A stretch of DNA of 61,824 bases, counting the filler, from Bipalium vagum (lineage: Eukaryota): NCBI GenBank assembly GCA_037834085.1. It is 3 parts of 3 records of this genome, joined end to end, with 100 filler letters (N's around TTAATTAATTAA, not from the genome) between each part and the next. Parts side by side here need not be neighbours in the genome. Positions count along the whole stretch, not along the records: positions 38,616 to 61,824 come from JBBMKC010212038.1; 2 more parts are not named here. One strand, 5' to 3'. The translations under genes and the position numbers were made by a program. A model generated the notes under the pieces. The model had not been told where the DNA came from. It made no database searches and saw only the letters and a list, made by a program, of their open reading frames with translations. Below, one piece after another: positions 39,243-61,293 of the stretch; the stretch's first letter is position 1; the number at the start of each line of letters is the position of its first letter.

Positions 39243-42200
39243 CAACCTTCGAAGTGATACCGAACGATGTGAATTACTACTTCATCAACTTCCCAATAAC
39301 CTTGTACTGTGACCCAGAAAGCGTATTCGTACACATTTATGTGGACACGCCCGCAATATACTACAGGGATCAGCGCATGGTCGATGTTGGTGGAAGTTAC
39401 ACTGTTGATAACCAAACGATTTGCGCCTATTGTGCTACAAACATGATTACGTTCCCCCAGAAATGCTTTGAGATATCAAGTAAGAGGTTTAATTCACAAA
39501 AACAAAACAGGAAAATTAATGTCAACAGTTGTCAGAAAATCTTTGACGGTAAACTGTTTTGTTTGAATAAATCAAAGTGGGTATGTACCTTTCAAAATGA
39601 GTTTTAATTTCTACAAGATGAATTCACAACAATATTAGTTGCAGATAAACAACAACACAAAATTAAACAATGATATTATTTTTTGGCTTTGGTTGCCTTG
39701 GGAAAAATGGAATTCATATTATTTTGGGATCGGTCATTGATATTTATGAACTGTCACAGTGAAAAATAATTGGATAAAATACCAGTTAGAGATTGGGTAA
39801 TACTTTTGTTTAAATAAATACCTGTTTGAACTGGAATCCATTTTATTAATGAATATGAAGCAAGATCGAACTGGCGACCACAGAGAAAATATTACTGTCG
39901 TTACAACAAGACAAGAAAGAAAGAAGCTTCGGGATGCTTTACCAAAACAAGCTCAGTAATTATTACATTTTCAGATCAAAATATTTAATGGACGGAGCTC
40001 GTCATAAGTAGATCGTTGTACTGACGAAATCAACGAGTTTCTTAGCATAAACGATCTGTGTTTGATCGGGATTTTGGATCTTTTACTATCGAGAGAAGCT
40101 TTTAAATTGTAGATGATTTTCAAAAAGGAAACTTTGACGAAAGACGAAGAGAAAAAAATGTTTGAGGAAACTTTTATGGTTGAAAAATCATTTCTAGAGA
40201 TTGTAATGGACCTAGCAGAACTTAAGCTAAACGTCTGAGTTTCCTTGGTGGTTTCGAGTCGGAAAGAAGGATGGCTATATTCGGATTTGCGTGGATTTCT
40301 GGAGAATGAATGTAATCACAATCTCTTATCCAATGCTCAATATGTTGTTGGACTGTATGGCTGGTTTGGAATATTTTTCGTCCATGGACTTGGGACAACG
40401 GCTTTCAGTGCCAAACAGGGACAGTTTTGCTTTAATCGAATGCCTTTTGGGCTGGCTGCAGCAGCAGCCCCCTTTCAGAAGGTTATGCACTAGTTGTTGA
40501 ATGGCTTAATATCCAATGGTGTTTAGTGTATCTTGATGATATTTTGATCTACAGTCCTAGATCAGGGACACGATGATATTTTAGAAGAAGTACTTGGAAG
40601 AATAGCTAAAGAAAGTATGAAGTTAAATCCAGCAAAATGTAAGTTTTATCAACATGGATTGGTCTTGCTGGGTCACATTGTTTGTGTTGACGAAATTCGA
40701 ACAAACAAGAAAAAGATTGAAGAGATTTTGAAGGTCGAACCTTCTGATTGTGTATGTCAATTGAGATCTTTTCCGGGACTAACAAATTAAATGGAAAAAA
40801 GGCGGATATAGACGGCTTAATTTCCGATCGAGAGAGAAAAACCGCAATGGACCGACCGATACCGGAAGAGTTTTCAAGATGTAAAGGAAAGATTATTATT
40901 TCTATAATAAATAAACATCTTTTTCCAGCCGGGAGGAAATACAAAAAGGTTGTCGAATTGTCCAAATTATGCAGATCATTTCCGGAAATGATTAAAAACA
41001 TTTAATTAATTATTTTATTAAATAATAATATATTATTTTATCACTTTTAACAAAGATTTTTGTACATTTTTTATTTTTAAAAAATATTTCAATTAAAAAT
41101 TTTAAAAGAAATAAATAAATTAAAAATTTTTTTTAGTTAAATGAATAAATATATTTATCACTTCTCACATGGTATTACTTCGATTAATTAATTAATTAAC
41201 TAATTAATTAATGATAAATAATTAAATTAATGTAGGAATAAAATATAAAATGACTGAAATATAATTTAATGAAGGATAGCAGACTAAGCTCGAGATCCAA
41301 GACTGGAAACCATAACTTGATCGGCATATTCGATTTAGTCAGGGTCTTCTTTGACTTTCGGTCTTCGGTGCTCGGTTTCTTTGGTCATTTCTGCTGACCT
41401 TCGTCTATTGTTTCATACTGAAACGTTCATTTCCATGTCCCAGAGTGAGCGGGTGAACATGGAAATGAACAGCTTGGTGGTTCTTATTGACACAATGATT
41501 TTATTCCACAAAACAGTTTCGAAAAGGTTTCTGACTGGTTCCGAATAATTTTCCTATTTTGTAATGCACAGCATAAGTTAGCAAAAACTGAATTTTATTG
41601 CAGATTTCGATATATTTATTGAACCGAACAACAAGGTTTTCCTATCAAGAGTGCCTTTTGTGGTAACGTGTACGACGGATGAGTCTCTCGGTCCTAGCTT
41701 TGCCTTCAACTTCAAATTCTTGACTTATAATGCCTCGGTATTTTCAAGGGAAGACCATTCCATCCATGTATCAGGGAATGACATGAGCAAAATATGCTTT
41801 ACCTGTGGAACTTCATTACATTTTGCCAAGACTAAATGCTATGATTACTATGGTGAGTATTTGTTCTTGTCTTGCATAATTAATATTATCAAACATTTCC
41901 CAATATTTCGTTTCGTTTTTTCTTTATGAATTGTATATTAATATTATTATTTGGAAATATTTTATGAAATCTTATTAGGCCGAGGGGATGTTCTAAACTT
42001 TTCGTAAGATACATTGAAGCATTGAACAAAAACCGTTAATTTAGAAAGAATATTAAATTTGGTCAACTTAAAGAAAAAGTTTGAAATGAAAGACAGTTTC
42101 AATCAGAAAGTCTTTCGTGAAAAGTCTTATTGTGACGAGAAGTTTACAAATATAACTTGGAAGACCAGAAAACTTAAAATCATATAATTCTGAATAAATT

Positions 42201-45200
42201 AGATATAAAAAATAAATTTTGTCGCTACTGGATAGTCCTTACGAACGATTGTCACTATGACAACTTAATGAAGCCTGGTTACGGTTTTCATTGGTCAGCC
42301 GAAAATGTATTGGTCCAATAGAAATCTATTATCAAGTCATTTGAGAATGAAAGAAATGGACGACAGATTCTCATATTGAAAAGTCCTGAGTTTTCAAGAA
42401 TTGATATTTCCCGAAAGGATCTAGCAAAACGATAATTCATCAGGGTCTTTTGAACCCATTTGTCGACTTTCCGGACCACTAGTAACATCCACAAACCACA
42501 GTTCAGTCGAACCTGTTATGATTGATATTTCCTAACTCTTAATTAATACTCAACATTTTCGTTGTGTCCTCGATATAAATTATGTGTAGCTCATGTCTAA
42601 ATTTTATCCATTCTTTTTCAGATAAACCAGTAAATTTCTCCATTTCTCCGAACGACACCGATTTTTACATGAAGGATGAGGAGCTGAACTTTTATTGTTC
42701 AGTCGAGCCTCCGGAAGTGATAACCCAAAACATGATCAGTCTATACTTTAATTCGACGTACCAACCTTTTGTCCGAAAATCGGTCGGCCACATTTACATA
42801 AAAGAAGTTCTCCAACCGTACCCAAAAATCTGCTTCTTTTGTGGCTATGCGCAAAAAAATCTAGATTCACGTTGCTATACGACTTTCGGTAAGTTTTCAT
42901 CACAGATTTTTTGAGGAACAACACGTCGTTCGCCAAACTTGTTTCCAATAATGTAACCCATTGCTATCATAACGTCAGCGAAATTCTTTTGACCTTACCT
43001 GGCCGCTCACTGACCGAAACTGGCTTAACTTGATTATTTGTTTTCTCGTGCCATTAGGGATTAACGGTTTCATTTGGTTTTGGATGTTCATAGTAAAAAA
43101 TACCTTTCTGGTCCGACTAAGCGAAATGTCTTCTTTTACACAGCAATTCGGAATTGAAATTGTTGACTACCGATTTGAATAGACCTTCGATTTTCTCTTT
43201 TGACAGTTGTCAAACAAACCCACCTTTCTTCTCTTGTCGTAAAGTCTTCTTGATCTTGAACCAATATTCTTCAATTATCACATTTCTTTTTCGTCCTGTT
43301 AGTTGGTCTGACATCCCTTTAGCTTTTCTTCAAAATATAAAAATCATTTTAAAATTCCCAAAGATGTTATTTGTGGAATTAATCTCGACATTGTTTGGTG
43401 TAAGAATGCTTATAATAAAATATCTCTTTTTTCATCTTTAAAAGGAAGTAAGACTGAGAAAAAATGATAATACGAAAACCCAGACCGAGGTCCATTCCAT
43501 GTTATCTTTTGTCCCTGGGATGAGGATGAATATCTCCATGTCTGAACAATAATTCCATGATATCTATTGTTAGACGAGACCTGATGAAATCGAATCTTGT
43601 TACTTTTCTAATTCTTGTAACAAGTAATAGACCATTTCAGACCGATCAACATTGTACGAAAACCACAGGTCAAGAGAACCGAGGAACAATTGCTATTTCG
43701 GAATTAGGGTCTTCATGTAGACAAAGTGTTGATAAGTCACTAAACAAACAATTTTATTCATTTTTCTTGATTATAGAGAGCGTCTTAAATAGGAAAATAG
43801 TAGACAACACCACCAGCATCGCTATTTTTAGCTTCAAGTATTCTTCATTTGTCCTGAAGGCGAATTTCAGTCGTCCTGAAACAAGGTGGTATTTGTTCTG
43901 ATCGCCTTCGTTTGGGGTAGCAGTCAGATGACTCAACGTTCCATCACAAGCACTGCATTATGCGGAATCGCGACAATCCGTAAACAGTAGGAATTGCTAG
44001 AAATCAAAATGCATCACCAAATTAGAATTTTTGGATAGCAAAGTGTTTTAAAATGTGTTTGTCTGAGAGGCTATCCTGAGAACATTGCATATCATGAATT
44101 TACATCCATCACCGATGAGTTGAATGCAAGAATTGTGGACACATGTCCTGAAATAAATGAATCAATTCTCTGGGTGAAGTAATGGAAAGCAGTATTTCTT
44201 TATAGTTTCATGATATATTGAAATAATAATATGAATGGGTTTTTGAGCGATTGTCAGTTGTGGTTTTCAGACATTTACACAAGACTAAAGTTGTCCAGTG
44301 ATTTATCGACCACTCCGTATGTGGCTTCATGGTCTTCAAATGAAACAAATCTTTTCACTGTAGACTCCACAGCACCTCTTAATTTTCAGATGACCTTTCT
44401 TATTTATCAGAATTTTCTAAGCTTAAAAGGGCATAAATACAACCAATACATCACACATGAGAGGGGAATACAATGAGCACAAATTGACATCTTCATTGAA
44501 CTATGAAGACGTTCATGTTTTCAACTTTTTCTGATATCTTAAGGTCTTGGGCAAGCTATCGAGAGTCTTTTGCAAATTTCCTCTTATTCGAATTGTTTGA
44601 TCATTTTGAACATGTTCTCTTCATTTGGATCGCTTACAGTAATTCTAGAAACCTTTGAAGAGGGTGTGAACTTCTTTTGCGAGGAAACTGTTCTTCTAGT
44701 CCGTCACAATTTGCCATAAAAACTTTCATAATCTTTAGGAATAGTAAAAATCTACCGTTTCTTGACCTTCACAAGGCCAAAAGTCTTGGCAACAAGTTAT
44801 AAGCAATGGTGTAGAGGTAATGAGAAACAATTATCAATTCTGGTCTTCTTCTTAGATAAGCCTGTGGTTGTCAATATCAAACCAAACAATTCCGAGGTGT
44901 ATTTGTCCAAACAAGTTCTCAATGTAACTTGTGAAATCGGACCTGAAAAATACCTAACAAAAGAAATAAGGCCCAAATTATTCTTCTCTTGGCATAATGG
45001 ATCGCGCTCAAGTCAGTCGTCTTTCTTCTATACTCTGAAGGGTGACAATGTTGGTACCGCCTGCTTCAGTTGTGGGATCACCACTATCATTGTCAAACAC
45101 AAGTGCTACAGATATTTTAGTATGAGCAGATTTCCTTCATGAAACAATTTCAAGATATATTTAGCTAAGAAGACCTCCATCTACATAGAGCCAAGCGATA

Positions 45201-48200
45201 CCAATATCTACATGGGCACTGCTGAGATGAACGTTACTTGCCACGCCGAACCTCCGGAACTTATTATTGAGAAGTTGATGACAAGGATTGATTTCACCTT
45301 CCACAATTCAACCTTGGACCAGTTAGAACCGAGGATTATCACGGTGAAAGGCATCTCGATTCAGAGAATATGTTTCCAATGTAGCCATGTGATGCTGGGG
45401 ACAGCGACAAGGTGCTACGACTACTACGGTATTGTGATTTTATTGTCATTTTATTAATATTAATGACATTGTACAAAACTTCTTCATTTGTTTTACTCTT
45501 TTTAGACCAACCCGTCAGTGTTAAAATCAAGCCGGATGATGTTGGCATTTATCTGTATAAGAAGGTCATGATTGTGACTTGCACGGTGTCGCCACCGGAT
45601 GTTGTTAACGATCAAAAAATAAAGGGAATAAAATTCATTTACAATAACTCAACCTTCCGACCTACTTCCGACCGTCAGATAATCATCACTGGCAGGGATG
45701 AAGGAACCATTTGCTTTCAATGTGGTCATGCTCTGCTGACTGCCGATACCCGCTGCTACGAGTACTACGGCAAGTTTTATATTTATCATTAATATTTGTT
45801 TCCTTTTGTTATCATTATGTCTGGAAAAAAGTTTTGAATTATTTCGAAACCAAAAGAATGGATTAAAATGAAGAGACTTTAGTGATTGATCTATTTCTTC
45901 GGATTTTATCTGACTCTCGTTTGAAAACTTCAGAAATAAAAACTGATAATAAAATTTATTCAACAATCATGATGTCCTTTAATAATCTCTCCTTTTTAGA
46001 TGAAGAGGTCCACATCACCATACAACCCGTAGATAAAAATATATATCTCCCAAATAAACTAATGACGGTGTATTGTACCGTAAAACCAGAGGATGCCGAC
46101 TTAAGACTGGAGGGGATAGATTTCTTTTTTTATTTCCCACAGACAAAGGTCCAAAAACAATATCGAAATATAACGTTTTCCCAAATCACAGAAAGATTTT
46201 GCGCAATCTGCGGACACCCGGCTGTTGGAAACGTTACGAAATGTTTGGACTACTTTGGTAAGAATTTCTTTACATGTTAATATTGTCAAAATATTTTCAA
46301 ACAGTTCGTCATTTTTCATCATTCTTCAGTATAAAATTGATTTATCCATTTCAAAAGAACCGCACGAACTTTATTGGTTACTTAATAAATGAAATATGTT
46401 GCATGTGTTACAAAAACCAATTAGAATTAGTTGACTTATCAAAATGGGAGAAGTCATTTTCCACGAAGGAAATTGTTTCAGTCAAAGCGTACAAAGATTG
46501 TGATTGACAAATCGGGAATTTGGTGAGACATTGATCAGATCACACCATGTGATCAACAATTACTTGAAATTAAAGGAGAATTATGGCGGAAACTGGAAAC
46601 CATTCGGCACGTTGAAATTAAATATTTAAACGAACTGTGGAGGTTGCGGTTTATAAAATGATAAATTATTCCAGATAAACGTAGAAAAGATAAAGTTTCT
46701 CATTTAATTTCGTCTGTGACAGTAATCAAACTTGGGAAACGCCCCTTCCGGGCTTAGGTCGAAAGACAGCATGGGAATCATAATACGGAAAGGATGTGTA
46801 GAGACCAAATTTAATGTCTGATTTGATGATGGAATGAATTGGGAAAATATAGGACATTATTGTCGTAATAATCGGGGTTCGCCAGTTTCAGAATTTATTC
46901 AGTTGACCGGGTCACCCAAAGGTCACACAGGAAATACATTTATAAACAATATGCATTGAGAATAAGATAGATGAATAACATGTACATAACACCGGGGTTA
47001 AGTACAATTATATATTGATCTTTAAATGCTTTAACTTGCATCGTTTAATTTGTTGTTTACTCCTATCATAGAACATTATTTGTTATTTCAGACAAGAAAG
47101 CCTCGTTCTTAATCACTCCAAACGACACGGAATTTTACTTCAAAGACACCAGATTGAACTTCCATTGCATTGTGACACCAGACGAACTGGTCACAAAAAA
47201 CATGATCACCTTGACGTTCAATACAACCTACGAAACCTTCGTTTATAAAACCGTTACACACATTTACATCAAAGAAGTCATTGATCCGTATCCTGAGATC
47301 TGCTTCCAATGTGGTTTTGAGGAACTCGGCTTTGATTCACGGTGCTACACACTTTTCAGTAAGTTCACTTCACTTTTTGTTTTTAAAATTTGGATGAAGA
47401 CTTTGACTTTACCATTTACTCTACCTTACGCTTTTTTTCTCAAGCTTTATGTAAAAATTGTTCCCATGAAATACGAGGGGAGGTTTCCTAATTTTTCACT
47501 GCTATTTCAGATATGTCGATGGTGGTAGATATCTTACCAAACAATTCCGAGGTGTATTTATCTAAAAAGCTGCTCAATGTAACGTGTGAAATCGGTCCTG
47601 AGGTATACCTAACGAAAGAAGTCAGGCAACGAATATTCTTCACTTGGAACAATGGCACAGGATCAAGCAAAACATCTTTGTTTTATATTCTGAGAGGTGA
47701 CAACAAGGGTCTCGTCTGCTTCACCTGTGGTATTTCAAACGTCCTCAACAAAACAAAGTGCTACATATATTATGGTATGATACAATTTTTTCATGGATGA
47801 AATAAGTTCAAGATATGTTTAGGTAAGATAACCTCTATCTACATAGAACCCAATGACACAATGATTTATCTGAACGGTGTTGAAATGAACGTCGTTTGTA
47901 AAGTGGATCCAGAGGAAATCATCACCGACAACTTGATGTCCGGAATTGATTTCACCTTCCACAATTCAACTTTGGATCAGATTGAACCGAGGGTTTTCAC
48001 GGTGAAAGACATTTCGATTGAGAGAATATGTTTCCAATGTAGCCATGTGATGCTGGGGACAGCGACGAGGTGCTACGACTACTACGGTATTATGATTTTA
48101 TTGTCATTTTAAAAGTGAGTCTAAAATTACCGTTTCGGGGCTTCAGTAATAAACTGTTGATATTTTCGAGAGTCAAATATCATTCCAATAAAGGGTACTT

Positions 48201-51200
48201 CGTTGTAAAGTTGGAACAATTAATCAAGATGATTTCAACTGGCTACAATTTTGCTTTTGGTGTCCTTTGGTCTCTTCCTCGCAAACAGGCATACTGAAAA
48301 GTGTATTTGTTTGAATACCATTTGTCAACTGGTTTGAAGGTCAACGTAAAATGACCTTGTTAAGATTGTGAATACTTTTAAATATGTTTCAACTTTGTCT
48401 CTGTCTAAATTAGAGCTTTCTTTGTGACAATGAAACGCGCTTGGGTTACTCTGATACTCAAATATCAGTGATGACCATTCCAAAGAAATATTTCTTTGCA
48501 TAACATCTTTTATTTGCGTTTTCTTAATATTATTAGGGTTACTCTGTAAATGTATTAAAATTGTACATTTTACCTTTTCGATTATTTTCAGTTTTCAGAG
48601 AACTTAAATCACAAGAGAACATCTTATTAAATAATGTGAAGGCACAATATAATTCTTTAATTTTTCCCTTCATTCAATTCTTACACCTTTCTTTAATATT
48701 ATTATCTTTACTTTGTCTAGATCCATCAGTCAGTGTCAAAATCAAGCCGGACGATATTTACGTTTATTTGCTCAATAAGGTTATGATTGTGACTTGCATA
48801 GTGACGCCACCGGAAGTTGCTGACCAAGGAAAAATTAAGGGAATAAAATTCATTTACAATAACTCAACCTTCATCCCTACCTCAGACCGTCAAATAATCA
48901 TCACTGGCAGGGATGAAGGAACCATTTGCTTTCAATGCGGTCATAAGTTGTTGAACAACGATACTCGATGCTACGAGTACTACGGTAAGTTTTATATTTA
49001 TCAAACTTTTATTAATCCTTTTTTGATTTTACATTATAACTTGAGTTACTGCTATACTCAAAATGTAACGTCGTGATTGTAAACTCTTAGTACTCACTTA
49101 GTTATTCTCGTGTTCGTGAATCAAAATAACAGTAATACAATTTACTCCCAATAACCCTCAATAAATCAAAATAATTATATAAACTTCTTTTATTACAAAA
49201 TAAATTCCAGAAATCGATTACTGCACAAACTAAAATCAATGTCAAATTTCATGCTGAAAAACACAAAATCCAATTAATGCCAAATTATGTTATGACTTAT
49301 TTAACTTTCAAATCGAAATAATTACTTAAAATGAAAAGGAAATAAAATAATATCTTTCTCACCGATGCTGTCAACGGGCTCCCGGGTCGTCCGCAAGCCA
49401 TTTATCGTTGTCTAGAGGTTCCAGGGACCAATCTGTACGGGACCCATCGAAAAATCCTGCTACTTCTTGTTCCTGAAAGAGAATTAACTACAATCAGTGG
49501 CAATTTTTCCGACGCAAAAACAATTTTGAAACAATCTGCTTCAATAATCTTCCCAAGCAAGATAATTAATTGTAGAACTACATGAACAGAATTAATTGAA
49601 GGACTACTACTCTGTCTTTAGCAAATTTCTAAACTAAATTCTGCCCTTGTAGTAGTAGTTGGTCGACAACCGCAAATCTCTATTTTTGGAAGGTTATTTC
49701 CTCGAATAGCTCATTAATTCGTCATCTCGACAACGAGATAAGATTTAATAAAATTATTATTATTATTACACATATTTTTCGACCTAAGAAAGAGAACATT
49801 TGTTTTGTTAAGTGAAAAAAAATATTGCTAAAAAAGTTTAATGTATCCTATTTAGAAAAAGATGTCAAGATCACCATTACTCCCGTAGACCGAAATATAC
49901 ATCTCCCGAACAAGCCTATGTCTTTGAGCTGCATCGTAGAGCCACAGGAAGTTGAAACGAAACTGGAGGGTTTAGATTTCTTTCATTATTTTCCAAAGAA
50001 AAATGTTCAGAAGCAATATCGGTATATATATTTTTCCCAAATCACAGACAGATTTTGCGCAATCTGCGGACATCCGGCGGTGGGAAACGTTACGAAATGT
50101 TTGGACTACTTTGGTAGGATTTTTTTTAAGAATATTTCCCAACGATCTTTGCTTTTCATCTTTCTTCGTTTTTAAAATTATACAGCGGGCTCTTCTCCAA
50201 AACAAGCGAATTGTAAAATAAAATAATAATATTTGTTCCCTTTTTCAGACCAGACAGCCTCGTTCACAATCTTTCCAAATGACACTGGATTTTACTTCAA
50301 GCAGTCAGAAATCAACGTCCATTGTACTGTAACACCACCAGAACTGATCACAAAAGATATGATCACTCTAACGTTCAATACGACCTACCAGACTTTCACC
50401 AGGACATCCCTGACGCACATTTTCATCAAAGAAATCACTGATCCATATCCTGAGATCTGTTTCAAATGTGGTTTTGAGGACTTTGGCTTTGATTCACGAT
50501 GTTACAATCTTTTCGGTAAGAATCTTTCATTAATTAATTGAAAATTAATTGTAGAAGATAGTTTCTGTGAAGAAGAAATACTAATAAAAGAATTAATTCA
50601 TAGGGTTTGGTCATTAGCATCAGACTACTTAGAGAAAAGCAAATACTGAATGTCATCAAGGAAAGATTATCAAAGAAGACATATTCTGACAGAACAATAG
50701 AACAGATCATCATTGATAGGATTAACACATTAATAATTGAGACATACGTCACCAAAGGGATTGAAATTCACAAGAATTTAGATAAAAGAAATATTAATTT
50801 TCAAAATTGTTTAGAGCTTTCAAGAAGTAATAGAGAGACCTCTACGACATGAAGATCTAAAGATGATTTCAATCACAGCGAAAACCATTAAATACATAAA
50901 AAAATTAAACTCGTGCAATGTTGCCACCAATATATTGTACCAAGTTAAATGTCATTTGAACAATAGCCTATACAGCGGGTGAGACAGCGTCACCTCTTAA
51001 CACGGATTAGTGAGCACACACAATTATGCAGAGCTAGTAAAATCTTACATCATTTAATGAGCTGCTTGGCACGAAACACTAAACCTAATGCAAAGGAAAC
51101 TTAGAACATTTACCAATTGAACTGACGAAAACGTTTATTTGGACCTAACCTTTTTGACTGTTTAAATTAAGTGATGAGAGATGTTGTTTATTACTTCCTC

Positions 51201-54200
51201 CTTTTAGATAGAAATATGGTCGTCAACATCTTACCAAGCAATTCAGAAGTTTACTTGTCAAAAAAGCCCCTCAATGTCGCTTGTGAAATTACACCAGAAG
51301 ACTACCTAACGACACAGGTAAGGCAAAGAATTTTCTTCACTTGGAACAATGGCACAGGGTCCAGTTCAACATCTTTGTTACATACTTTGCAAGGTGATAA
51401 CAGAGGTACCGTCTGCTTCAGTTGTGGGATTACTACCGTCGTTGTCAAATACAAGTGTTACCGATTTTATGGTATCTATGACCCTTTGTTTATAAAGGAC
51501 GAATATCAACACTTGTTAAGGAAAGAAAACGTCTATCTATATTGAGCCCAGCAATACCAAAATCTACCTGAGCAATGTTGAGATGAATGTTATTTGTAAG
51601 GTGGACCCAGAGGAAATCATCACCGACAACTTGATGTCGGGAATAGATTTCACCTTCCACAATTCAACCTTGGACCAGTTTGAACCGAGGCTTTTCACTG
51701 TGAAAGGCATCTCGCTTGAGAGAATTTGTTTCCAGTGTGGCCATTTGTTATTGGGGACAGCGACAAGGTGCTACGACTACTACGGTATTATGATTTTATT
51801 GTCATTTTATTAATCTTAATGACTTTGCAAGAAAAATCTTCATTCGTTATACTCTTCCTAGACCAACCCGTCAGTGTTAAAATCAAGCCGGATGATGTTA
51901 ACGTTTATTTCACCAGGAAAGTATTGACTGTGACCTGCATCGTTACGCCGCCCGATATAATTCAGGATCGAAAAATAGATGGAATCAAATTCATTTATAA
52001 CAATTCGACCTACACACCTTCCTCAGACCGTCAAATAATCATCACTGGCAGGGATGTAGGAACCATTTGCTTTCAATGTGGTCATGCGCTGCTGACTTCC
52101 GATACCCGCTGCTACGAGTACTACGGCAAGTTTTATGTTTAATTTTGTCATCATCATCATCATTTTTTTTATCCTCAGCAAAGACTTTAATAATTGATCC
52201 GATTTAGACAAAGGGTACAATATCATTATAAGTCCCATAGACAGAAATATATACCTTCCAGGAGAACGTATGGTTCTGACATGCTCTCTAGACCCTGAAG
52301 ACTTGGGCTCAAAAGTTGAAGGGGTGGACTTTATTTATTATTCACCAAAGACAAATGTTGAGGTTCATTACCGTCAACTTCAATTTTGGGACATCAAAGA
52401 CAAGTTTTGCGCAACTTGTGGACATCCATTCGTTGGAAACGTTTCGAAATGTTTGGATTACTTTAGTAAGTGCTGTTTGATTTGATTTTGTTAATATCGC
52501 CTCCATATAAATGTCAATTATCTTCATTATTATTTCTCAAATTGTAACATTTCAATGAAAGGGTAACACTGGTATCTGGTGCAACATTAATATTTTGACC
52601 TATTATTGAAAATCGGTATTATATGGAGCTATTTGTTACCTAGGAAAAAATTCTTCAGAACTCAATTATAACGCTTCTTGATAAGACATATGTGACTTAA
52701 ATGAATGTGCTATGCTGAAAGTTTATGGTTTGATAGTTTATTGTAGTTCATATGTGATTGGTAAATGTGATTGGTGGGAAAGTCAGGGCACGACGTCAAA
52801 ATTTAATATTTTTAAACAACTATTTTTAGTAACAAAAATATTTGAAAATATATTGCTCTTTTATTTTGCAGACCAAACGGCTACGTTCGAAATCACTCCA
52901 AACGACACGGAATTTTACTTCAAGCAAACTGAAATCAACGTTCATTGCATCGTTACCCCAATAGAACTGGTCACGAAAAATATGATCATTCTAACTTTCA
53001 ATACGACCTACAGCACTTTTATTCGGAGATCTGCTACACATATTTATCTCAAAGAAGTCATTGCGCCGTTTCCGGACATCTGCTTCAAATGTGGCTTTAC
53101 AGCACTAGGTTTTGATTCACGGTGTTACACGGTTTTCGGTAAGTACTTATCGTTGAGGGACCCTCGGAATTCCCAACCATGACGACGTTCTTGCAAGTAA
53201 ACATCAACAAATAATCATTTTTTTGTTCCCTAGCTCATCTTAATGAACCATTTTGTCGGTTTGGCTAAAGGGCTTTAATTGTCAGGTTATAATATTGGTT
53301 ATCTATTGTTTCCCGCCTTCATAGATATGCGGATCGAGATCCACATCTTACCGAACACTTCGGAAATTTATTTGTCTAAAAGGATTCTCAATATAACTTG
53401 TGAAATTGGACCTGCTCAATACATGACGCCGGAAGTACAGAAAAGAGTATTTTTTTCCTGGAAAAACGGCACGGGAACGAGCAAAACAATTTTGACCTAT
53501 ACTTTGAGAGGTACTAATGATGGTCTTGTCTGCTTCACCTGTGGTATCAAAACTGTTACAGTCAAGCACAGATGCTACAGATACTACGGTATGTATTCAT
53601 GCTCTACTGACATGATCTTATTTCGAGGACTGTTAAGACAAGAAAGCTTCGGTCCAAATTGAGCCCAATGACACGAAAATCTATCTGAGCGACGTTGACA
53701 TGAAGGTGGTCTGCAGGGTGGAGCCAGAAGAAATTGTCACTGACAACCTGATCACAGAAATCGACTTCACCTTCAACAACTCTACTTTGGACCAGATAGA
53801 GCCGAGAATTATCATCTTAAAGGGCATAACCGTCGAGAGGATATGTTTGCAGTGTGGCCATATTGTACTGGGTACTGCCACAAGGTGCTACGACTACTAC
53901 GGTATTGTGATTTTATTATTATTATGTTCTATGTCCAACTGGGACCAATTTTCATTCCGTTCTTAACATTTTGTTGACGGCGCACGTTGAGGAAACGTGA
54001 CATCGTGTGACTAAATTGAAAATAAAAAAGAAATGAAAATGTTTTCGATAAAAACAAAATAAATTAATCAAATAATTAGTTAATAAAAGTAATTTGATTA
54101 ATAGGAAAATATTAAAAGCACAAAAACAAGACCAACCAAAACTAATGAAGATTGAGTAGTTGAGATGACAACATTCTGACAAACCTGGCTCAGTGAACAC

Positions 54201-57200
54201 CTCTTGGAAACCCTCTCCAGTCTCAAGGGGTCCGAAACCGCCCCTCGGGACACAGCATACCAACAACAAAACACAAATCTATATTCAGGCATTTCCTTTA
54301 GCAACGATTTACAAAAAATTTCTTTATCTTCCAAGTTCATACAGGTGTTATATATTGGATGTTTGAGAACTGCTGGTTGATGGATTATTTTCAATTGCTT
54401 CGAGTACCACCTTATAATCCACGGTTCCAGGTCGATCAAAACATGGCTCATTCTGAAGATGCGTGTTCCTTATTAAATTTTTTGAACCAGCTTTTGGCTG
54501 TGCAAATGGCGAAGTTTTTTTCTTTAGTGTCAGATATTCTCGTGGGCGCTTCCTTGAAATTAAAGTGCTGTTTCCATTAATAACTGAGAAACACTATAAT
54601 TTCAAAATTTTCCATATTGCTAAAACACAAAAAATAGATTACGAAAACAACCTTTTGAGATATATATTACAGTTCATATTAAAGCTAATTTAAAAATCTA
54701 TAAATTGATACATTACTTACCGAAATCAATAAAATATATCTGCTTTAAATATCACTTTATATATACTGTACAAAAACTCAAGATTATGTAAATTTTGATT
54801 GGATAAAAATCGAACGAATGAAATTCCAAAAAGACAAATACTTGATAGTGTATGTTATGTTTTAGTTCTTTTTTTTATGTTGGATAAAGAAATTAATTCA
54901 GCTTTAACATTGTAACTTGAAATTAAAATAATAAATAATAATCTTTGATAAAAATTAAATAATATTTAGAAATGAAATATTCTTGGAGAAAGATTAAAAT
55001 TATAATAAAAATAATAATAATAAAGATAATATGTTTCAGTGATATTCGTGTGACAGTGAACATTTTTATCCCTTTTACTTTGTTACAGACACGCCGATCA
55101 GTATTAAAATCAAACCGGACGACGTTGACGTTTACTTGCCTAAGAAGGTCTTGATTGTGACCTGCACTGTGTCGCCAACCGAAATCATTGATGATCGCAA
55201 AATAGATGGAATAAAATTCATTTATAACAATTCCACCTTTAAGCCTTCCTCAGACCGACAAGTAACCATCACTGGCAGAGATGAAGGAACCATTTGCTTT
55301 CAATGTGGACATAGGATGTTGATTAACGATACTCGGTGTTATGATTCCTATGGCAAGTTTTAATTTTTTATTAATGGTATTTTTATTATTATCAACCGGT
55401 TTTGGATAACTATTATTCAACCAAAAAAAGCTCAGAATAATCTTTAATAAATGATTTCGTTCAGCAAACGAAGTCAAGATCATCATTAGCCCAATAGACA
55501 GAAACATTTATCTGCAGGATGAGCGCGTGGAAATGTTTTGTACCATTGATCCAGTACACTTAAGTTCACGCGTTAAGGGCGTGGATTTTACTTCTTACTC
55601 CCCAAATAAAACCGTTGACAAGCAGTACCGTCAAATTACCTTTTGGGATATGAAAGATACGTTTTGCGCAACCTGTGGACATCCGTCCATAGGAAACGTC
55701 ACGAAATGTCTGGACTACTTTGGTAAGTATTATAGTTCTTTTCGAATTGATTTAAATCTTCAATTTTCATGATTCCTTATCTTGTATTGCTGACCTGCAA
55801 AAACAATCAGGTTACCAATATTTCCTTCGGAAAAGATTTTTTTTTCTTTTACCGTTTCTATTTCTATTCCCTTTTCTTCTGTTTATTTTTATTTTTTTTA
55901 CTGTTTGCTTTTCTTATAACTTAATCATCGTTTCAGTATATCAAAAGATCAGAAGGGTGCAACAGTTAAGACTGAAAACTTTTATTATGTCAATAATGAC
56001 AGAACTAATCAATGTAAATTTTGCAAGAAAAATATAAATAAACTAAGATTGAGCCTAAATTAAAAAAAATTACTCATAAAAAGATTACATTTATTTAATA
56101 GTCAACATTTCTCTGAATCCCACTCACTGTGTTTAATAGTCCACTAAGATATCGCCTAGTACTTTTCTGACACACACCTTCACCAACCCTGACACTAGAC
56201 CTCAAAATAGACTGATAAATAAAATAATTAAAACAACGAAAGTAAATGAAGAAAACTCAAAAGCAGTCAATTGAAGATAAATCAATTTGAACTATTGATC
56301 ACAATTCACAAAAAAGGATGAACTCAAATCTATTGGTTCAATTACGATATTGAAAAGAGAAACACGATACGGTTCATCGAATTATAACAAATCTTCTTGG
56401 TTTCTAGATCAACGACGGAACCAAACTATGATATACAGTCCACTTTTCTACTCACCTTTCAAAAGAAATCACACCAAATAATAATTATAACTAGGCGTCA
56501 AATGCTTTCCTTTCCTTTTATAGATTTTTTGGATTTTGAATGAAGAAATATTGTGATTGCATAGAGGGGCACAATAGTCTTAATTTTAGTCAATGTTTAC
56601 TAAAGGTCTTTCTCAATTAAGTTCTGTAGAAAGTTCCTATTTACATCAGAATCATGTCTGAAAGAGTGAAGGGTTATTAAATTCCATTCTTTAAATTTAT
56701 TTAAAACGAACACTGACATTTTCTTACGTAAGGAGTTCCGGACTAACCTTGTTAATTATCGAAAGTGGTTTCATAGCATTTTTATGCTTAAAATTCATAT
56801 AGAATTCAATTCCAAACATTGTCTTTCGTCGGTGATTGCTCACCATCCGGACACCAACTGTTTGGTCGTCCTTGGATTTTCGCATAATTATTAAACAATA
56901 TGAACGATTAAAACAAGTGGAATTGATACCTTTGACTGTAATACATGCTGATTTCTGCAGATTTATATAATACGTTGATGAAAAACGACAACGTTTATGA
57001 AACGACCTAATAATAGTAATAATATTATTATTATTATTTTAATGAGAATTTGCTATTTTATTTAATTCTTAGAGCTTTGGGTAAGTCATCTGTAGGGTGG
57101 AGATGCAATTTGTTTATATTATTAAAATGAATTTTGTTTTTCATGGTCAAATAAAAAGAGGTTATAATAAGCCATGTCTCTCTGTTTCCCGTTAGAAAGT

Positions 57201-60200
57201 CAATTTTCTGTACCTACTTATACATCTCTCAGGGGTCTTCCCTTATTATTGCTCCTTTCTTATTCTTCTCAACTGTTACGAAGAACGGTATCTTTAAGTA
57301 TTCACGAGCCATTTCATTTGACAAAAAGTCCATTGAAATGGTGTAAATCTTTCCAGATCAAAATGTGACGATAAAGGTCATCCCAGATGACAGCAACGTT
57401 TACTTTATCAACACGGAGAAAAATTTTTATTGCCTTATAAAACCACCGGAACTGCTCACCCAAAATCTCATTTCCAACATTGTCTTCGAGTCGAACTATT
57501 CCGATAGCACAAAGCTTTCCGAAACCCACATTTTTATAAAGAAGGACATGAACAGCTATCCGAAAATATGTTTCAAATGTGGCCACACTCTGTTCTATTT
57601 GGATACGCACTGCTATGATCCGTATGGTAGGTTTTGTTTTCATTTATGTATTTAATAATAAATGATCCTTTTAAAAAGATCGCGTCAGATTAATATCATT
57701 TATTAAAACACACTCAAATTTTTAAGTCCACTCAACATTAACATTAAAATATTTTGAAAGACCGCTTTTAACATTATTTTATTTTTATTCTTTTTCCATG
57801 ATAATTATTGAGTTTTCCTATAACTTTTACAAAGATTTTTGTAACGAGTGGTCGGAAAGTTTTGGCACAAAATATATTGGTAAAGAAATTGTAAAATCTT
57901 GAAATTAGCAATCAATCAATGTATACCTCTAAAACCCTTTATCTCCTCTCTGTATATCTGTCTACGCTCGAAAACGGATAACGGTTGTATCGCAGCCGAA
58001 GAAGTAAACTCTTTGTCTGTCGGTTTCGTATGGAAATATATTTTATTTAAATCTTTGTCGATTTTTAGATATATCACGATAACTACATAAAAGTGGGTTT
58101 TGTTTGAATGAATCCATGTTTGAAAATATTCTAAATTTAGTTACAAATCTGGATTTGAAAATTGATTTAATTCGATTTTATTATGAAAATGGAAATTCCA
58201 CTACGTTTGGAATTTAGGAGAAACCAAACGCCAAAGTAATTTAATTTGTGAAAATATTGGAAGAAAATGGAAATGTTGTCAATGTACCTCATTGATAAGA
58301 CGTCCATTCAAACATTATTACGGGAAAGAAATATTCCACCTGCCTCGGTTCAACGAATATTATAAGGAGAGAAGTTAAATCATTTTAAAATACAAATATT
58401 TCATGAGCTAAAACCAGATGATTATGATCAACTGAATAAAATTGGTCTGTAGTTTTTGCAGCACCAGGATATACTACACACCATGTGATTATTGGTTTCA
58501 GACTACTCTTAAGGCAAGGGTTTTCCTTTACCAAAACCAACCTACTTCAAACGGATAAACAAATAAACGAAGAATATTCCTGTTTCACTATTAAAATCAA
58601 TAAATCCCAAAGAGTACTTCATAAAGATTGAAATTAGAGTAGAGATATCAGCAAATAAAAGCTTACACCATTTTTATTATTTAAACTTTATAATATCCAT
58701 ACTGATATCGTTACATTATCAATTGGTCGTGGTTGGAGAAGTAAAAATTCCCACAGTCTGATTGCCACTGTTTATAAATCGTACATATTTTATGATGACC
58801 ACAGACTGGTGCTCGCCTTTTGGGGGGGGGCAGCTTTGTTGAGACCTGGTTAAAACGTAATACAAAAATTACTTTTTTCTTAAATGTAATGTGGAAATAA
58901 TATTTTTCAAGTTTGGCCCGTTAGGCTTGTTGAACAATTAAAAATAAGTTTCCCAAAGGTGCAACCCATCCACGACTGATTGTCAAAATGAAAACCTTTG
59001 CTATATTTTTTATAAATGTTAAACTTTTTCCTGTTTTAGGACATCACGAAATTGTTATTGAGCCAGCCCATGTGAACATATATTTGCCTGCTGTTCCCAT
59101 GAACGTAGAGTGCAACGTGTCCCCGGGTGACCTGCTCATGGTTATTGGAAACATTGACTTTTTTAATATCACAGCTCCTTATAATCAAACTGAACCGCGA
59201 AGGGTAACGTTTGGTCCTCTCACTGCCCAAAAGGTCGATAATGTTTGCTTATCTTGCGGTCACAGAATCACCAAAAATGTCACGAAATGTTATAAAAGAT
59301 ACGGTAATGTTATTATTGATATTTATTATTTACATTTTCAAATTATGTGTCCCTTATACACGTTTATCATCGAAGTAGTTTGATTAAATATCAACAATCT
59401 TCATTTTGTTTGGTAATGATCAAGAAGACCGTCAAAGGGTTTGAATTAGACTAAAGGTACAACGGAATATTGACGCAATAAATTTCGCTTAATTTGAATC
59501 TCTGTTTTTTTCTTTTCTTTCTTCTCTCTCTTTCTTTTTTTCTGTGTACAACAAATACCTTCGGGATCTACCAGGCCGATTGAAATAAAACGTTAAGTAA
59601 TTAAAACAAAGCAATATTTATTCCTTTGACATTGTTCACAGATTGCACATGAATGATCAGGTCACAATCCATATTTCGGTTTGCTACTGTCTTATTTTTT
59701 CAATTCACGGAATGCGGACATACGAAAAATGTTCTTCTATTTGCAGGAGGCGTTCCTGTGTCAAATGTTACATGTTTTTGGTTAATTTGGTCGGGAAATT
59801 GAACCAGTTGTCTGACTACGTTGACTAATAACTGACACCGACTGAGTTGTTTCGTTTCCTCCCTACCTGATTGGATCCTAATAATAGCAGCCTTCGTGCC
59901 CTTGATATCGATCATGTTATAAAAAATGACCGTTTTCTTTTCTTTTTCACAGAGTAGCAAGTTACTTTTTGATCCATTTGATCAAGTTCACCTTTGGTCT
60001 TTTTGTAGGTGAAAATATTTTCTGTTTTTTTTTCAGTTTCCTCAACCCGTTTCTCATGAGGCGAGGCACTACGTAATGTGACAACTTTTTATCTTCTGGG
60101 GGAATATGAAACTATTGTCGAGAAATCTTTACATTCAAATGCAACCGTCTATGTAACCGTCTACCAACTGTGACAGCAAATTCCTTAGGTAATTTGGGTT

Positions 60201-61293
60201 GTTTTGTGTATGGTTCCAATGCATGTTATCTTTGTCATAAACAAATATTCCGAAATATCTCAACAGGTGAAAAGTTATCAAAGGTTTTATTCCTAAAACT
60301 AGGCTTTTAGTAACCGATTTTTCTATTTTCTTGAAAGGCAAAATTTACAAACATTTCAAATGTTATGTGGGGCCTCACAGACTCAATTGGTACGTTTAGG
60401 GTTAATCCAGACTACATCCCAGGCAATGACGTGATCAAGGAATGCTTATTCCCAACCAAATCTCAAGATAACAGATGATCCTGAGTAACCTGGGTTTATT
60501 GTAAATTGAGATTGCTTTACGAGGTACAAGATCATTGACATGAGATCCAAGAGCATTGGAGTGACCTCTTGTCTGATATCTTCATTAAATGCCTTTCACA
60601 CTTCATTATAAAACTCCTTTCCTTTGTAGTTGCTATTAGTGATGTAAGAGCAAAATAATTAAAGCACGAAAACATATTTTTCTATGAAGTTTCGTTAACG
60701 TTTATCAGAACCACGAGGAGAACTTCATTTACATATTACTTTTTATGAAGACCAAACCCATAATGGATGACATGTTCGCTTATCAATGCACTTCACAGAG
60801 GAACAATAAAGACAAATGTGTTTTCCCCTTTCGTCAAAGGGTGCGACGAGTATAAGACCACTGAAGGACCAATTATAGATTTATACACAAAATTTGCTTT
60901 TGCTCTCCCATCAACTTTCTTTATGATAGTCACAAATGGAAAATCAGTTCGCCGCCTTCAACTGTTAAAGCTTCTCAACAGTCCTTTGACAAAAACTGAG
61001 GATTGACCTTGGAATATATGTTTCAGATAAGCCAGTCACGTTCTCCATTTCCCCGAACGACACGGAATATTACTTTAAACAAACCGAATTGGACGTCTAT
61101 TGCGTGGTCAACCCCGAGGAGATGGTTACAAACAATCTCATCTCTCCCGTGTTTAACTCGACGTACATTGACGCAGTTCTAAAGTCCCCTATCCATATTT
61201 ACATAAAGGAGGTCACTCACCCGTTTCCAAAGATCTGTTTCCAGTGCGGTATCGTTGAGCTGAACTTTGTTTTGCGCTGTTATTCCCTGTTCG
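39243..61293 (+). CDS. Giant multi-exon protein of >=25 tandem divergent Ig-like 4-Cys domains (one exon per domain); partial at both ends
   Basis: Exons: X1 39243-39479, X2 41604-41852; A1 42622-42888, B1 44856-45119, C1 45165-45428, D1 45506-45769, E1 46000-46257; A2 47092-47358, B2 47511-47774, C2 47823-48086, D2 48721-48984, E2 49856-50113; A3 50249-50515, B3 51208-51471, C3 51521-51784, D3 51862-52125, E3 52208-52465; A4 52872-53138, B4 53325-53588, C4 53638-53901, D4 55089-55352, E4 55465-55722; then 57357-57626, 59040-59303, 61027-61293. Every exon follows an AG, ends at GT or GC, is a multiple of 3, is phase 1-1 and has no stop. The total is 6555 nt (2185 codons). The Ig-like assignment is inferred from the motif pattern. 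Confidence 0.85.
40180..40750 (+). mobile_element. Ty3/gypsy reverse transcriptase relic (intron X1-X2)
   Basis: Frameshifted reading gives ICVDFWRMN, YFSSMDL, TAFSAKQGQFCFNRMPFGL, CLVYLDDILIYS and MKLNPAKCKF..LLGHIV. Confidence 0.85.
50610..51090 (+). mobile_element. Penelope-like element relic (RT C-terminus plus GIY-YIG endonuclease) in intron A3-B3
   Basis: It reads LNVIKERLSKKTYSDRTIEQII, then TNILYQVKCHLNNSLYSG..RHLLTRISEH..SKILHHLMSC. Confidence 0.65.
54340..54600 (-). mobile_element. Mariner N-terminal fragment in intron C4-D4
   Basis: The minus strand reads TAKSWFKKFNK..NEPCFDRPGTVDYKVVLEAIENNPSTSS. Confidence 0.6.
58090..58660 (+). mobile_element. Heavily decayed Tc1/mariner-superfamily relic
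   Basis: It reads WEENGNVVNVP, FKIQIFHELKPDDYDQ and a degenerate PDxTPCDYWF-type segment. Confidence 0.45.
59446..60401 (-). mobile_element. Internally deleted piggyBac
   Basis: There is a TTAA|CCCTAAACGTACC terminus at 60401 (minus). The minus strand reads TIVSYSP..KVVTLRS..IFTYKKTKGELDQMDQKVTCYSVKKKRKR and VIFYNMIDI, matching the piggyBac YNxTKGGVDxxDQ region. The far end is approximate. Confidence 0.65.

What the first reader, a model, noticed from the sequence alone, without database searches (positions are those of the whole stretch)
39243..61293. Array of >=25 cassette-like exons, each one divergent 4-Cys Ig-like domain: candidate novel giant or variable surface receptor system
Seen: 25 stop-free exons of 237-270 nt, all phase 1-1, each encoding one domain. 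The consensus is about [D]xx(V/I)xIxPxDxx(I/V)Yxxxxx(M/L)xVxCxVxPxE...(F/W)xNxT...ICFxCG-x9-C(Y/L)xx(Y/F). The CxxC-x10-C spacing looked invariant wherever I counted it. All exons stay intact although the introns are full of dead transposons, which implies purifying selection. Established: one domain per symmetric phase-1 exon is the hallmark of Ig-superfamily and other shuffled extracellular modules. Inference: the A-strand IxP, the B-strand VxCxV and, in B-type domains, FFxWxNG resemble I/C2-set Ig domains. The canonical DxGxYxC is replaced by CxxC plus an extra G-strand Cys. I recognise no known family with this signature. Spliced whole it gives a >2100-aa rod. Because any exon subset stays in frame, it could also yield combinatorial isoforms for adhesion, self/non-self recognition or antigenic variation.
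Basis: partly seen in the sequence, partly recalled or inferred. Interest (0 to 1): 0.88.

Follow-up and report, generated by a model that had tools for sequence, protein, structure and literature searches.

The report
Giant gene of novel Ig-like repeats
This 22-kb stretch is part of a real gene in an unidentified eukaryote that encodes a very long, sugar-coated extracellular protein of at least 25 immunoglobulin-like domains of an undescribed sequence family; they recur in a fixed five-domain order, so it looks like a structural rod, not a variable receptor.

Summary
There are 25 exons on the + strand, 237-270 nt each, all phase 1-1 with GT/GC-AG borders. Each encodes one ~87-aa domain with exactly four Cys (one in strand B, then C-x2-C-x10-C).

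Same-class exons show dN/dS of 0.09-0.36 at dS 0.4-2.1, so they are old duplicates under purifying selection. N-glycosylation sequons are threefold enriched (54 against 17 expected).

Two independent AlphaFold models (pLDDT 86.6 and 94.3) give a seven-strand Ig-like sandwich. Its best matches are NCAM Ig1, ICAM D1, VCAM D1 and MDGA1 (Z 8.0-8.7).

No Pfam or PDB sequence match exists. A profile search of 1.84 billion proteins found only 10 unnamed single-exon fragments from environmental assemblies. Two of their contigs show the same one-domain-per-exon design.

The domains fall into five classes in a strict A-B-C-D-E order, repeated four times, and each class is one clade. That is a titin-like super-repeat made by block duplication. 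It argues for a constitutive giant rod and against Dscam-like alternative exons.

No RNA data were available. The source organism, the gene ends and the function remain unknown. The "dead transposons in introns" claim was not confirmed.

The parts
39243..39479 (+). exon x1, divergent short domain (78 aa), 4 Cys
   Evidence: HMM E 8.5e-16; CAG acceptor, GTAAGA donor, phase 1-1
41604..41852 (+). exon x2, divergent domain (82 aa), 4 Cys
   Evidence: HMM E 3.5e-22; splice sites
42622..42888 (+). exon A1 (class A), super-repeat unit 1
   Evidence: HMM E 7e-29; class A clade 100/98
44856..45119 (+). exon B1 (class B, FFSW-NG type)
   Evidence: HMM E 4.8e-30; class B clade 100/100
45165..45428 (+). 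exon C1 (class C), after a 45-nt intron
   Evidence: HMM E 1e-33; intron table
45506..45769 (+). exon D1 (class D), GC-AG donor G|GCAAGT
   Evidence: HMM E 4.4e-34; donor sequence
46000..46257 (+). exon E1 (class E); folded as second model
   Evidence: HMM E 2.1e-27; AF2 pLDDT 94.3
47092..47358 (+). exon A2, unit 2
   Evidence: HMM E 9e-30
47511..47774 (+). exon B2
   Evidence: HMM E 2.8e-30
47823..48086 (+). exon C2, after a 48-nt intron
   Evidence: HMM E 1e-34
48721..48984 (+). exon D2 (GT donor); folded as first model
   Evidence: HMM E 1.3e-32; AF2 pLDDT 86.6
49856..50113 (+). exon E2
   Evidence: HMM E 1.5e-26
50249..50515 (+). exon A3, unit 3
   Evidence: HMM E 5.4e-30
51208..51471 (+). 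exon B3
   Evidence: HMM E 4.5e-30
51521..51784 (+). exon C3, after a 49-nt intron, AAG acceptor
   Evidence: HMM E 1e-35
51862..52125 (+). exon D3, GC-AG donor
   Evidence: HMM E 7.7e-34
52208..52465 (+). exon E3
   Evidence: HMM E 1.6e-25
52872..53138 (+). exon A4, unit 4
   Evidence: HMM E 3.8e-29
53325..53588 (+). exon B4
   Evidence: HMM E 4.1e-29
53638..53901 (+). exon C4, after a 49-nt intron, AAG acceptor
   Evidence: HMM E 7.1e-35
55089..55352 (+). exon D4, GC-AG donor
   Evidence: HMM E 5.2e-34
55465..55722 (+). exon E4
   Evidence: HMM E 1.5e-26
57357..57626 (+). exon A5 (basal class-A member, 270 nt)
   Evidence: HMM E 8.9e-30; tree
59040..59303 (+). exon y, unclassified divergent domain
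   Evidence: HMM E 1.5e-25; long branch
61027..61293 (+). exon A6 (class A, groups with A1-A4); last exon before the contig ends in an AT microsatellite
   Evidence: HMM E 4.2e-28; tree; TRF 61726-61824

Best explanation
The stretch is an internal part of one large gene. The gene is cut at both contig ends.

Shown:
- Each of its 25 phase 1-1 exons encodes one compact Ig-like beta-sandwich domain of a sequence family not yet described. There is no linker between domains.

Inferred:
- Spliced in order, the exons give a secreted or surface-anchored, heavily N-glycosylated rod of at least 2185 aa.
- Each domain is probably stabilised by two disulfides. The likeliest pairing is B-strand Cys to the second Cys of the CxxC (buried, between the sheets) and first Cys of the CxxC to the G-strand Cys (across the F-G hairpin).
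- The domains form a five-class super-repeat (A-B-C-D-E, four full units) made by duplicating a five-exon block. Each class has since been conserved separately.
- That suggests position-specific roles along the rod, such as periodic self-assembly or periodic binding of a matrix or cell-surface partner, as in other giant Ig-repeat proteins.
For: Gene reality:
- 24 of 24 introns have GT/GC-AG borders, and every exon is a multiple of 3 in phase 1-1.
- The 45-49-nt B-to-C introns carry stops or shift the frame, so they must be removed.
- dN/dS is 0.09-0.36 with dS 0.4-2.1 in the 28 same-class pairs that could be estimated.
- Identity by codon position is 0.76/0.84/0.58, against 0.53-0.55 in intron flanks.
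- Contigs of an independent assembler reproduce the array with no differences in the long pieces listed.

Fold:
- AF2 gives pLDDT 86.6 (class D) and 94.3 (class E), with the same seven-strand topology.
- Top structural matches are NCAM Ig1 at Z 8.7, MDGA1 at 8.6, ICAM-5/-2/-3 D1 at 8.2-8.4 and VCAM-1 D1 at 8.0. Nearly all of the top 50 are Ig-superfamily domains.
- hhalign against I-set repeats gives probability 60.6%, E 8e-5, with the B-strand Cys aligned.

Extracellular location:
- There are exactly 4 Cys per domain and 54 sequons against 17.3 +/- 3.8 in shuffles, at conserved positions.

Super-repeat:
- The five classes are each one clade with support 93-100, in fixed order (repeat families).

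Conservation elsewhere:
- Environmental contigs L001 and L002 carry 2 and 4 consecutive one-domain exons with G|GT donors and short introns.

Disulfide pairing:
- In the class-E model, strands 66-72 and 76-84 place C67 opposite C81 (my reading of the DSSP string).
Against: - No transcript evidence of any kind exists; no RNA run holds the sequence.
- No signal-peptide, transmembrane or terminal exon lies on the contig, so secretion is inferred only from Cys and sequon statistics.
- Fold-match Z scores of about 8 sit at the level the tool itself calls 'may mean only a common arrangement'.
- Foldseek E-values are weak (0.005-0.02).
hhalign instead aligns the Ig F-strand Cys with the first Cys of the CxxC.
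Confidence: 0.72

Rival explanations
1. Variable receptor. The exons are cassettes used in changing subsets, by exon skipping or mutually exclusive splicing, to make many isoforms for self/non-self or mate recognition.
For: All exons are symmetric phase 1-1, so any subset stays in frame. The fold resembles adhesion and recognition receptors, including Dscam Ig domains at Z about 7. B and C exons have weaker donors (GTATGA, GTATTG) than the others.
Against: Phase 1-1 symmetry is the rule for constitutive Ig-repeat genes too (established knowledge). Classes are interleaved A-B-C-D-E, not clustered as alternative versions of one position. dN/dS is at or below 0.36 in every estimable pair, with no sign of diversifying selection. 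No conserved intronic docking or selector elements were seen. The 45-49-nt introns are simply minimal introns, also seen in relatives.
Confidence: 0.07
2. Several adjacent smaller paralogous genes, each with a few domains, and not one giant gene.
For: Some introns are long (1.2-2.1 kb) and could hide small terminal exons. The contig is short and both ends are open. Read laying suggests near-identical copies elsewhere in the genome.
Against: Every exon has both an acceptor and a donor in phase 1. No exon starts with a Met plus signal peptide or ends in a stop. No other coding-like stretch was found in the introns.
Confidence: 0.08
3. Metal-binding domain. The CxxC-x10-C plus the fourth Cys, or the frequent His after CxxCG, binds zinc, and the protein may be intracellular.
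For: The only sequence-level PDB hits are CxxC zinc sites: a RanBP2-type finger at E 0.09-0.46 and Fur at E 0.26. One Pfam zinc-ribbon hit at E 0.015 occurs in one of the 27 members. The spacing equals the first three ligands of a RanBP2 finger.
Against: None of those hits is significant. The fourth RanBP2 Cys is absent. The His is missing in classes A and B. Both models put the CxxC inside a regular beta-strand, so its two Cys face opposite sides. The strong, position-conserved sequon excess points to the secretory pathway.
Confidence: 0.04
4. Decaying or unexpressed relic array that only looks intact.
For: There is no RNA evidence. The family has no annotated members.
Against: There are no stops or frameshifts in 25 exons despite dS up to about 2. 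Codon-position asymmetry and low dN/dS show constraint. Splice sites are intact at all 48 borders. Relatives with the same design exist in other organisms.
Confidence: 0.04

Closest known systems
I-set / C2-type Ig domains of metazoan adhesion molecules (NCAM Ig1, ICAM-1/-2/-3/-5 D1, VCAM-1 D1, MDGA1)
   Same: Seven-strand Ig-like sandwich of about 85 aa; a Cys in strand B and Cys in strand F; one domain per phase 1-1 exon; tandem arrays; N-glycosylated. Best structural matches have Z 8.0-8.7. ICAM D1 domains also carry two disulfides (own knowledge).
   Different: No Pfam Ig model matches any of 27 members even at E 10. The DxGxYxC motif is replaced by I-C-F-x-C-G. There is an extra G-strand Cys. 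The strand-C Trp is present only in class B. The profile-profile link to I-set is only 60% probable.
Super-repeat architecture of giant Ig-repeat proteins (titin A-band 7- and 11-domain super-repeats; own knowledge)
   Same: Distinct domain classes recur in a fixed order, and each class is more similar across units than to its neighbours. Growth was by block duplication. There are no linkers.
   Different: Here the signature is extracellular (Cys, sequons), a single domain type is used (titin mixes Ig and Fn3), and the period is five domains. No partner is known.
Dscam1 alternative exon clusters
   Different: In Dscam, variants of the same half or whole domain lie side by side and are mutually exclusive. 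Here five different classes alternate, and no selector-like conserved intron elements were found.
Divergent invertebrate IgSF families recognised only by predicted structure: Hydractinia Alr family (PMC9546547) and Ig/Fn3 domains of sponge Aggregation Factor partners (PMC11670116)
   Same: Ig-like fold with sequence decayed beyond the reach of standard Ig models; extracellular; lineage-restricted.
   Different: No sequence relation was detected. The exhaustive search that includes NCBI and UniRef proteins found none of them. The abstracts and passages read here describe those as histocompatibility / allorecognition and adhesion components; that Alr proteins are short receptors is my own knowledge. 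This gene is an array of 25 or more domains.
Abalone VERL and other ZP-N repeat egg-coat proteins (PMC3567151)
   Same: Giant glycoprotein made of many tandem Ig-like, four-Cys repeats; an example of what such an array can do (own knowledge plus the cited paper's topic).
   Different: Per my own knowledge, ZP-N has a Cys in strand A and a different C1-C4/C2-C3 layout. No ZP Pfam hit and no ZP-N structure among the top 50 fold matches.
Rotifer mate-recognition protein repeats (MMR-A/B, 87-92 aa; PMC2746195)
   Same: Repeat length of about 87 aa; surface glycoprotein; no database homologues.
   Different: MMR genes are intronless, predicted alpha-helical, have nearly identical repeats kept by concerted evolution, and lack N-x-T sequons. 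This lead was rejected.

Membership tests
Immunoglobulin superfamily (I-set/C2-set) | Seven- to nine-strand Greek-key beta-sandwich of Ig topology | tested here: met
   Two AF2 models (pLDDT 86.6 and 94.3) have strands A, B, C, C'/D, E, F, G. Top matches are NCAM, ICAM, VCAM and MDGA1 at Z 8.0-8.7.
Immunoglobulin superfamily (I-set/C2-set) | Significant match to a curated Ig sequence model (Pfam I-set, ig, Ig_2, Ig_3, C2-set) | tested here: not met
   No Ig family at E <= 10 in any of 27 members or E <= 1 in 10 domains. The control protein P0011 hits I-set at 2.8e-76.
Immunoglobulin superfamily (I-set/C2-set) | Remote homology by profile-profile comparison | tested here: inconclusive
   hhalign against I-set repeats of P0011: probability 60.6%, E 8.4e-5, 61 columns. 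The family profile hit that I-set protein at E 3.1e-5 in the 1.84-billion library.
Immunoglobulin superfamily (I-set/C2-set) | B-F inter-sheet disulfide, strand-C Trp, DxGxYxC in strand F | tested here: inconclusive
   The B-strand Cys and F-strand Cys are invariant. Trp occurs only in class B. The motif is altered to (D-x-G-x)-I-C-F-x-C. Pairing is inferred from strand register, not measured.
Dscam-type mutually exclusive exon cluster | Adjacent exons are alternative versions of the same domain position | tested here: not met
   Five classes are interleaved in fixed order and each class is one clade.
Dscam-type mutually exclusive exon cluster | One exon per cluster in each transcript | not testable with these tools
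   No RNA run holds the sequence.
Super-repeat giant Ig-repeat protein (titin-like architecture) | Domain classes recur in a fixed order; same-class domains of different units are closer than neighbours | tested here: met
   A-B-C-D-E repeated four times; class clades have support 93-100; repeat families D1-D5.
ZP-N domain | Pfam ZP match and the ZP-N Cys layout with a strand-A Cys | tested here: not met
   No Pfam hit. No Cys lies before strand B. No ZP-N structure is among the top 50 fold matches.
RanBP2-type or ribbon zinc finger | C-x2-C-x10-C-x2-C with four ligands in a knuckle | tested here: not met
   The fourth Cys is absent. Hits have E 0.09-0.46 only. The CxxC lies inside a beta-strand in both models.
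Rotifer MMR mate-recognition repeat | Intronless, near-identical alpha-helical 87-92-aa repeats | tested here: not met
   Here there is one exon per repeat, an all-beta fold and 20-84% divergent copies, against the description in PMC2746195.

The most novel reading that the evidence does not exclude
The array is the core of a germline-encoded diversity system. Because every exon is symmetric, regulated skipping of single domains or whole five-exon units would give many isoforms of a surface recognition molecule built from a previously unknown Ig-like domain family, in a lineage with no described recognition receptors.
Probability: 0.07. Interest if true: 0.85.

Novelty: new variant of a known kind. 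Interest (0 to 1): 0.45.

Why it matters
It adds a well-defined domain family to the Ig-like fold. The family has about 87 aa, an invariant Cys in strand B, C-x2-C-x10-C across the F-G hairpin, conserved sequons and one phase 1-1 exon per domain.

Current sequence models miss it entirely. It has no annotated member among 1.84 billion representative proteins. That is another case where sequence decay hides Ig-superfamily-like proteins in poorly sampled eukaryotes.

The profile made here (alignments A1, A2, A5) could be used to annotate such genes. The five-domain super-repeat offers a clean system for asking how periodic giant extracellular proteins are built.

It is not, on present evidence, a new kind of biological system. 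Giant tandem Ig-like extracellular proteins with lineage-specific domains are common in animals.

Tried and rejected
- Pfam on single domains, on environmental relatives, and member by member at E <= 10: nothing consistent.
- PDB sequence profile searches with two alignments: only non-significant CxxC zinc-site look-alikes.
- Word-based homologue search with one domain: no candidates.
- Rotifer mate-recognition protein, recalled for its 87-aa repeats: rejected after reading the paper.
- ZP-N, Sushi/CCP and zinc-finger readings of the four-Cys pattern: rejected on Cys layout, fold matches and lack of hits.
- Transposon content of the introns: 20 intronic stretches gave no Pfam support. An RT-like piece had no homologues.
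- Metagenome scan with conserved peptide patterns: 133 pattern matches, none a relative.
- Degenerate DNA signature scan: 5 loci (L006-L010) that match only the searched motif at about 17 bits. These are chance hits and were not analysed further.
- Sample identifiers searched in the literature to identify the habitat or taxon: nothing.
- ESM Atlas feature search: only sub-threshold leads to Ig clusters.
- tRNA scan: none.
- So there was no full-length search, no tandem-domain structure model and no complex prediction.
- The source organism could not be identified; run and organism names are coded.
Full report
**Scope.** Work was confined to the piece 38616-61824. It holds no N. No full-length search or multi-domain model was made.

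**1.
- A regular-expression scan for C-x2-C-x(8-12)-C in all six frames finds 26 matches on the + strand. Twenty-five of them sit in long stop-free stretches that share an obvious domain. The - strand gives only 5 short chance matches.
- A profile built from the 25 domains was run over every stop-free piece of both strands. It returns exactly those 25 at E 8.5e-16 to 1e-35. Nothing else scores below E 0.1.
- Splice-signal mapping gives a single consistent solution. Exons are 237-270 nt, all divisible by 3. Each starts with two bases and ends with one base of a split codon (phase 1-1).
- All 24 introns start with GT, except three D-class exons that carry G|GCAAGT exactly where the fourth D exon has G|GTAAGT. 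All introns end in AG.
- The split codons encode Asp in 15 of 24 junctions and never a stop.
- Intron lengths run from 45 nt to 2124 nt. The B-to-C introns are 45, 48, 49 and 49 nt. They contain stops or shift the frame, so they must be spliced out.
- From the base composition, a stop-free run of 85 codons has a chance of about 0.002 (my arithmetic).
- Contigs of the only public run holding this DNA cover a 5.9-kb test stretch, with no differences in the long pieces listed. The repetitive array is therefore not a misassembly.

**2. The exons are under protein-level purifying selection**
- The 25 domains fall into five classes, plus a few outliers.
- Same-class exons from different units are 61-84% identical at the DNA level. 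dN is 0.08-0.39 and dS is 0.42-2.1, giving dN/dS of 0.09-0.36 in the 28 pairs that could be estimated. In two further pairs dS was saturated.
- A model-free check gives identities of 0.76, 0.84 and 0.58 at codon positions 1, 2 and 3. Intron flanks are at 0.53-0.55.
- The one exception is the 77-nt C-to-D intron shared by units 1 and 3. Its flanks are 80-89% alike, which points to local gene conversion or a younger duplication.
That argument could not be verified: 20 intronic stretches have no significant Pfam hit. A piece that looks RT-like by eye has no homologue.

**3. What each exon encodes**
- The alignment shows an invariant Cys at position 25, invariant C69-x2-C72-x10-C83, P9 invariant among the 25 window domains, and nearly invariant I7, Y15, P29 and F43. 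Every domain has exactly four Cys.
- N-x-S/T sequons number 54, or 2.2 per domain, against 17.3 +/- 3.8 in composition-matched shuffles (maximum 31 in 2000). They sit at recurrent positions (10, 22, 43/47, 77/79).
- An even Cys count plus a conserved sequon excess is the usual mark of a protein that passes through the secretory pathway (established knowledge). No signal or membrane exon lies on the contig, so this remains an inference.
- AlphaFold2 on a class-D domain gives pLDDT 86.6 and pTM 0.76. On a class-E domain, which is 31-33% identical, it gives pLDDT 94.3 and pTM 0.82.
- Both models are all-beta with the same strand order and a short helix after strand B.
- An exhaustive structural comparison with 48,161 PDB representatives puts Ig-superfamily domains on top for both models:

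| Match | Class D model | Class E model |
|---|---|---|
| NCAM Ig1 | Z 7.9 | Z 8.7 (rmsd 2.3, 78 aligned) |
| MDGA1 | Z 7.8 | Z 8.6 |
| ICAM-5 D1 | Z 8.4 | Z 8.4 |
| ICAM-3 and ICAM-2 D1 | Z 8.2 | Z 8.2 |
| VCAM-1 D1 | Z 7.6 | Z 8.0 |

- Foldseek E-values are weak: best 0.02 and 0.005. Atlas matches are bacterial Big_2 domains at TM 0.6-0.66.
- The tool warns that Z of about 8 can reflect a common arrangement. The statement supported is therefore "Ig-like sandwich, closest to I-set/C2 adhesion domains", not proven homology.
- A profile-profile comparison with the I-set repeats of a mussel titin-like protein gives 60.6% probability (E 8.4e-5), with the B-strand Cys in register. That protein is the only annotated hit of the family profile (E 3e-5). 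This is suggestive only.

**4. Disulfides (inference)**
- In the class-E model, strand F spans 66-72 and strand G spans 76-84. This puts C67, the first Cys of the CxxC, directly opposite C81 on the neighbouring strand.
- Hydrophobic alternation (I-C-F-x-C and C-Y-x-Y) puts the second CxxC Cys on the core face, where the B-strand Cys lies.
- I therefore favour a C(B)-C(F2) core bond plus a C(F1)-C(G) hairpin bond.
- hhalign would instead pair the canonical position with C(F1).
- A zinc site is unlikely. The only zinc-finger similarities are non-significant. The His after CxxCG is absent in classes A and B. The two CxxC cysteines face opposite sides of a strand.

**5. Architecture**
- The order along the DNA is x1, x2, then A-B-C-D-E four times, then A5, y, A6.
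- In a maximum-likelihood tree, each class is a single clade: A 100/98, B 100/100, C 93/63, D 93/85, E 100/99. The observed 5 label changes compare with a mean of 18.7 in shuffles.
- DNA repeat finding recovers the same five families. Similarity stops within about 10-20 nt of the exon borders.
- The array therefore grew by duplicating a five-exon block. Each class has since been conserved on its own.
- This is the architecture of super-repeat giants such as titin (own knowledge). It is the opposite of a Dscam-type cluster, where neighbouring exons are alternatives for one position.
- Together with the uniformly low dN/dS, this makes the combinatorial-receptor reading unlikely. I put it at about 7%. 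Without RNA it cannot be excluded.

**6. Relatives**
- No Pfam model matches.
- An exhaustive HMMER search of 1.84 billion representative proteins found 11 hits. Ten are unnamed fragments of 71-164 aa on contigs of 0.6-1.5 kb from ENA, JGI and Logan assemblies. They come from at least five ENA assemblies, one JGI metagenome and two Logan runs.
- All ten keep the four Cys, and most end at the same Y-Y-G border.
- Contig L001 carries two consecutive domain exons and L002 carries four. They have G|GT donors, CAG/TAG acceptors and short introns.
- The five relative contigs whose DNA could be read have GC of 24-27%, against 34% here. They therefore come from other species.
- The family is thus real, conserved in design and rare. 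It is absent from annotated proteomes in that collection.
- Two further metagenome scans added nothing.
- The source organism could not be named; identifiers are coded and sample names were not found in the literature.

**7. Verdict**
- The Ig-like call, the novelty of the sequence family and the giant-protein reading are supported.
- The variable-cassette reading and the transposon remark are not supported.
- The best explanation is a partial gene for a giant, glycosylated, disulfide-stabilised extracellular rod of novel Ig-like domains with a five-domain super-repeat (confidence 0.72).
- It is a new variant of a known kind and of moderate interest. The interest lies mainly in the domain family being invisible to current sequence models, and in the clean super-repeat.

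Noticed in passing
window 45770, 52126, 55353 (first intron bases after exons D1, D3, D4): Three of the four D-class exons use a GC-AG intron (G|GCAAGT), while D2 has G|GTAAGT at the same place. The non-canonical donor has been kept through block duplication.
   Followed up: partly
window 51513-51520 and 53630-53637: Exons C3 and C4 are preceded by the rare AAG acceptor (..TTGTTAAG| and ..CTGTTAAG|). C1 and C2 have TTTAG|. These sit in the 49-nt minimal introns.
   Followed up: no
window 45429-45505 and 51785-51861: The C-to-D introns of units 1 and 3 are both 77 nt, and their flanks are 80-89% alike. That is as similar as the neighbouring exons and unlike other intron pairs. It suggests local gene conversion or a younger duplication of that segment.
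   Followed up: partly
window 49750-50240 and 51728-51924: When the public run's contigs are laid on the stretch, depth roughly doubles here. Many contigs run on into unlike sequence (46% of those laid overall), and 36 of 81 are only 95-99% alike. Near-identical copies of these exons probably exist elsewhere in the genome: more units of this gene, paralogues or the other haplotype.
   Followed up: no
window 45649-45966, 52023-52238, 55250-55507 (- strand): Stop-free antisense stretches of 71-105 aa with a shared peptide run across the D-class exons. This is most simply a by-product of the sense-strand codon composition and not a gene.
   Followed up: no
window 61726-61824: The contig ends in an AT-rich microsatellite (periods 2-14). 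This probably explains why the assembly breaks here, inside an intron of the gene.
   Followed up: no
window 40231-40497 (+), two overlapping frames: By eye this resembles a frameshifted LTR-retrotransposon reverse-transcriptase core, with a second motif in an overlapping frame. Neither Pfam (E <= 0.1) nor a homologue search supports it.
   Followed up: yes
L002:9-137 and L002:938-1102: The first and last partial exons of this 1107-bp environmental contig encode the same peptide about 1050 nt apart. Either this is a three-exon super-repeat with near-identical units in that organism, or the assembly has wrapped around a repeat.
   Followed up: no
window 39060-39092: A 16-nt unit is repeated 2.1 times (94% match) just upstream of the first exon. 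Its meaning is unknown.
   Followed up: no
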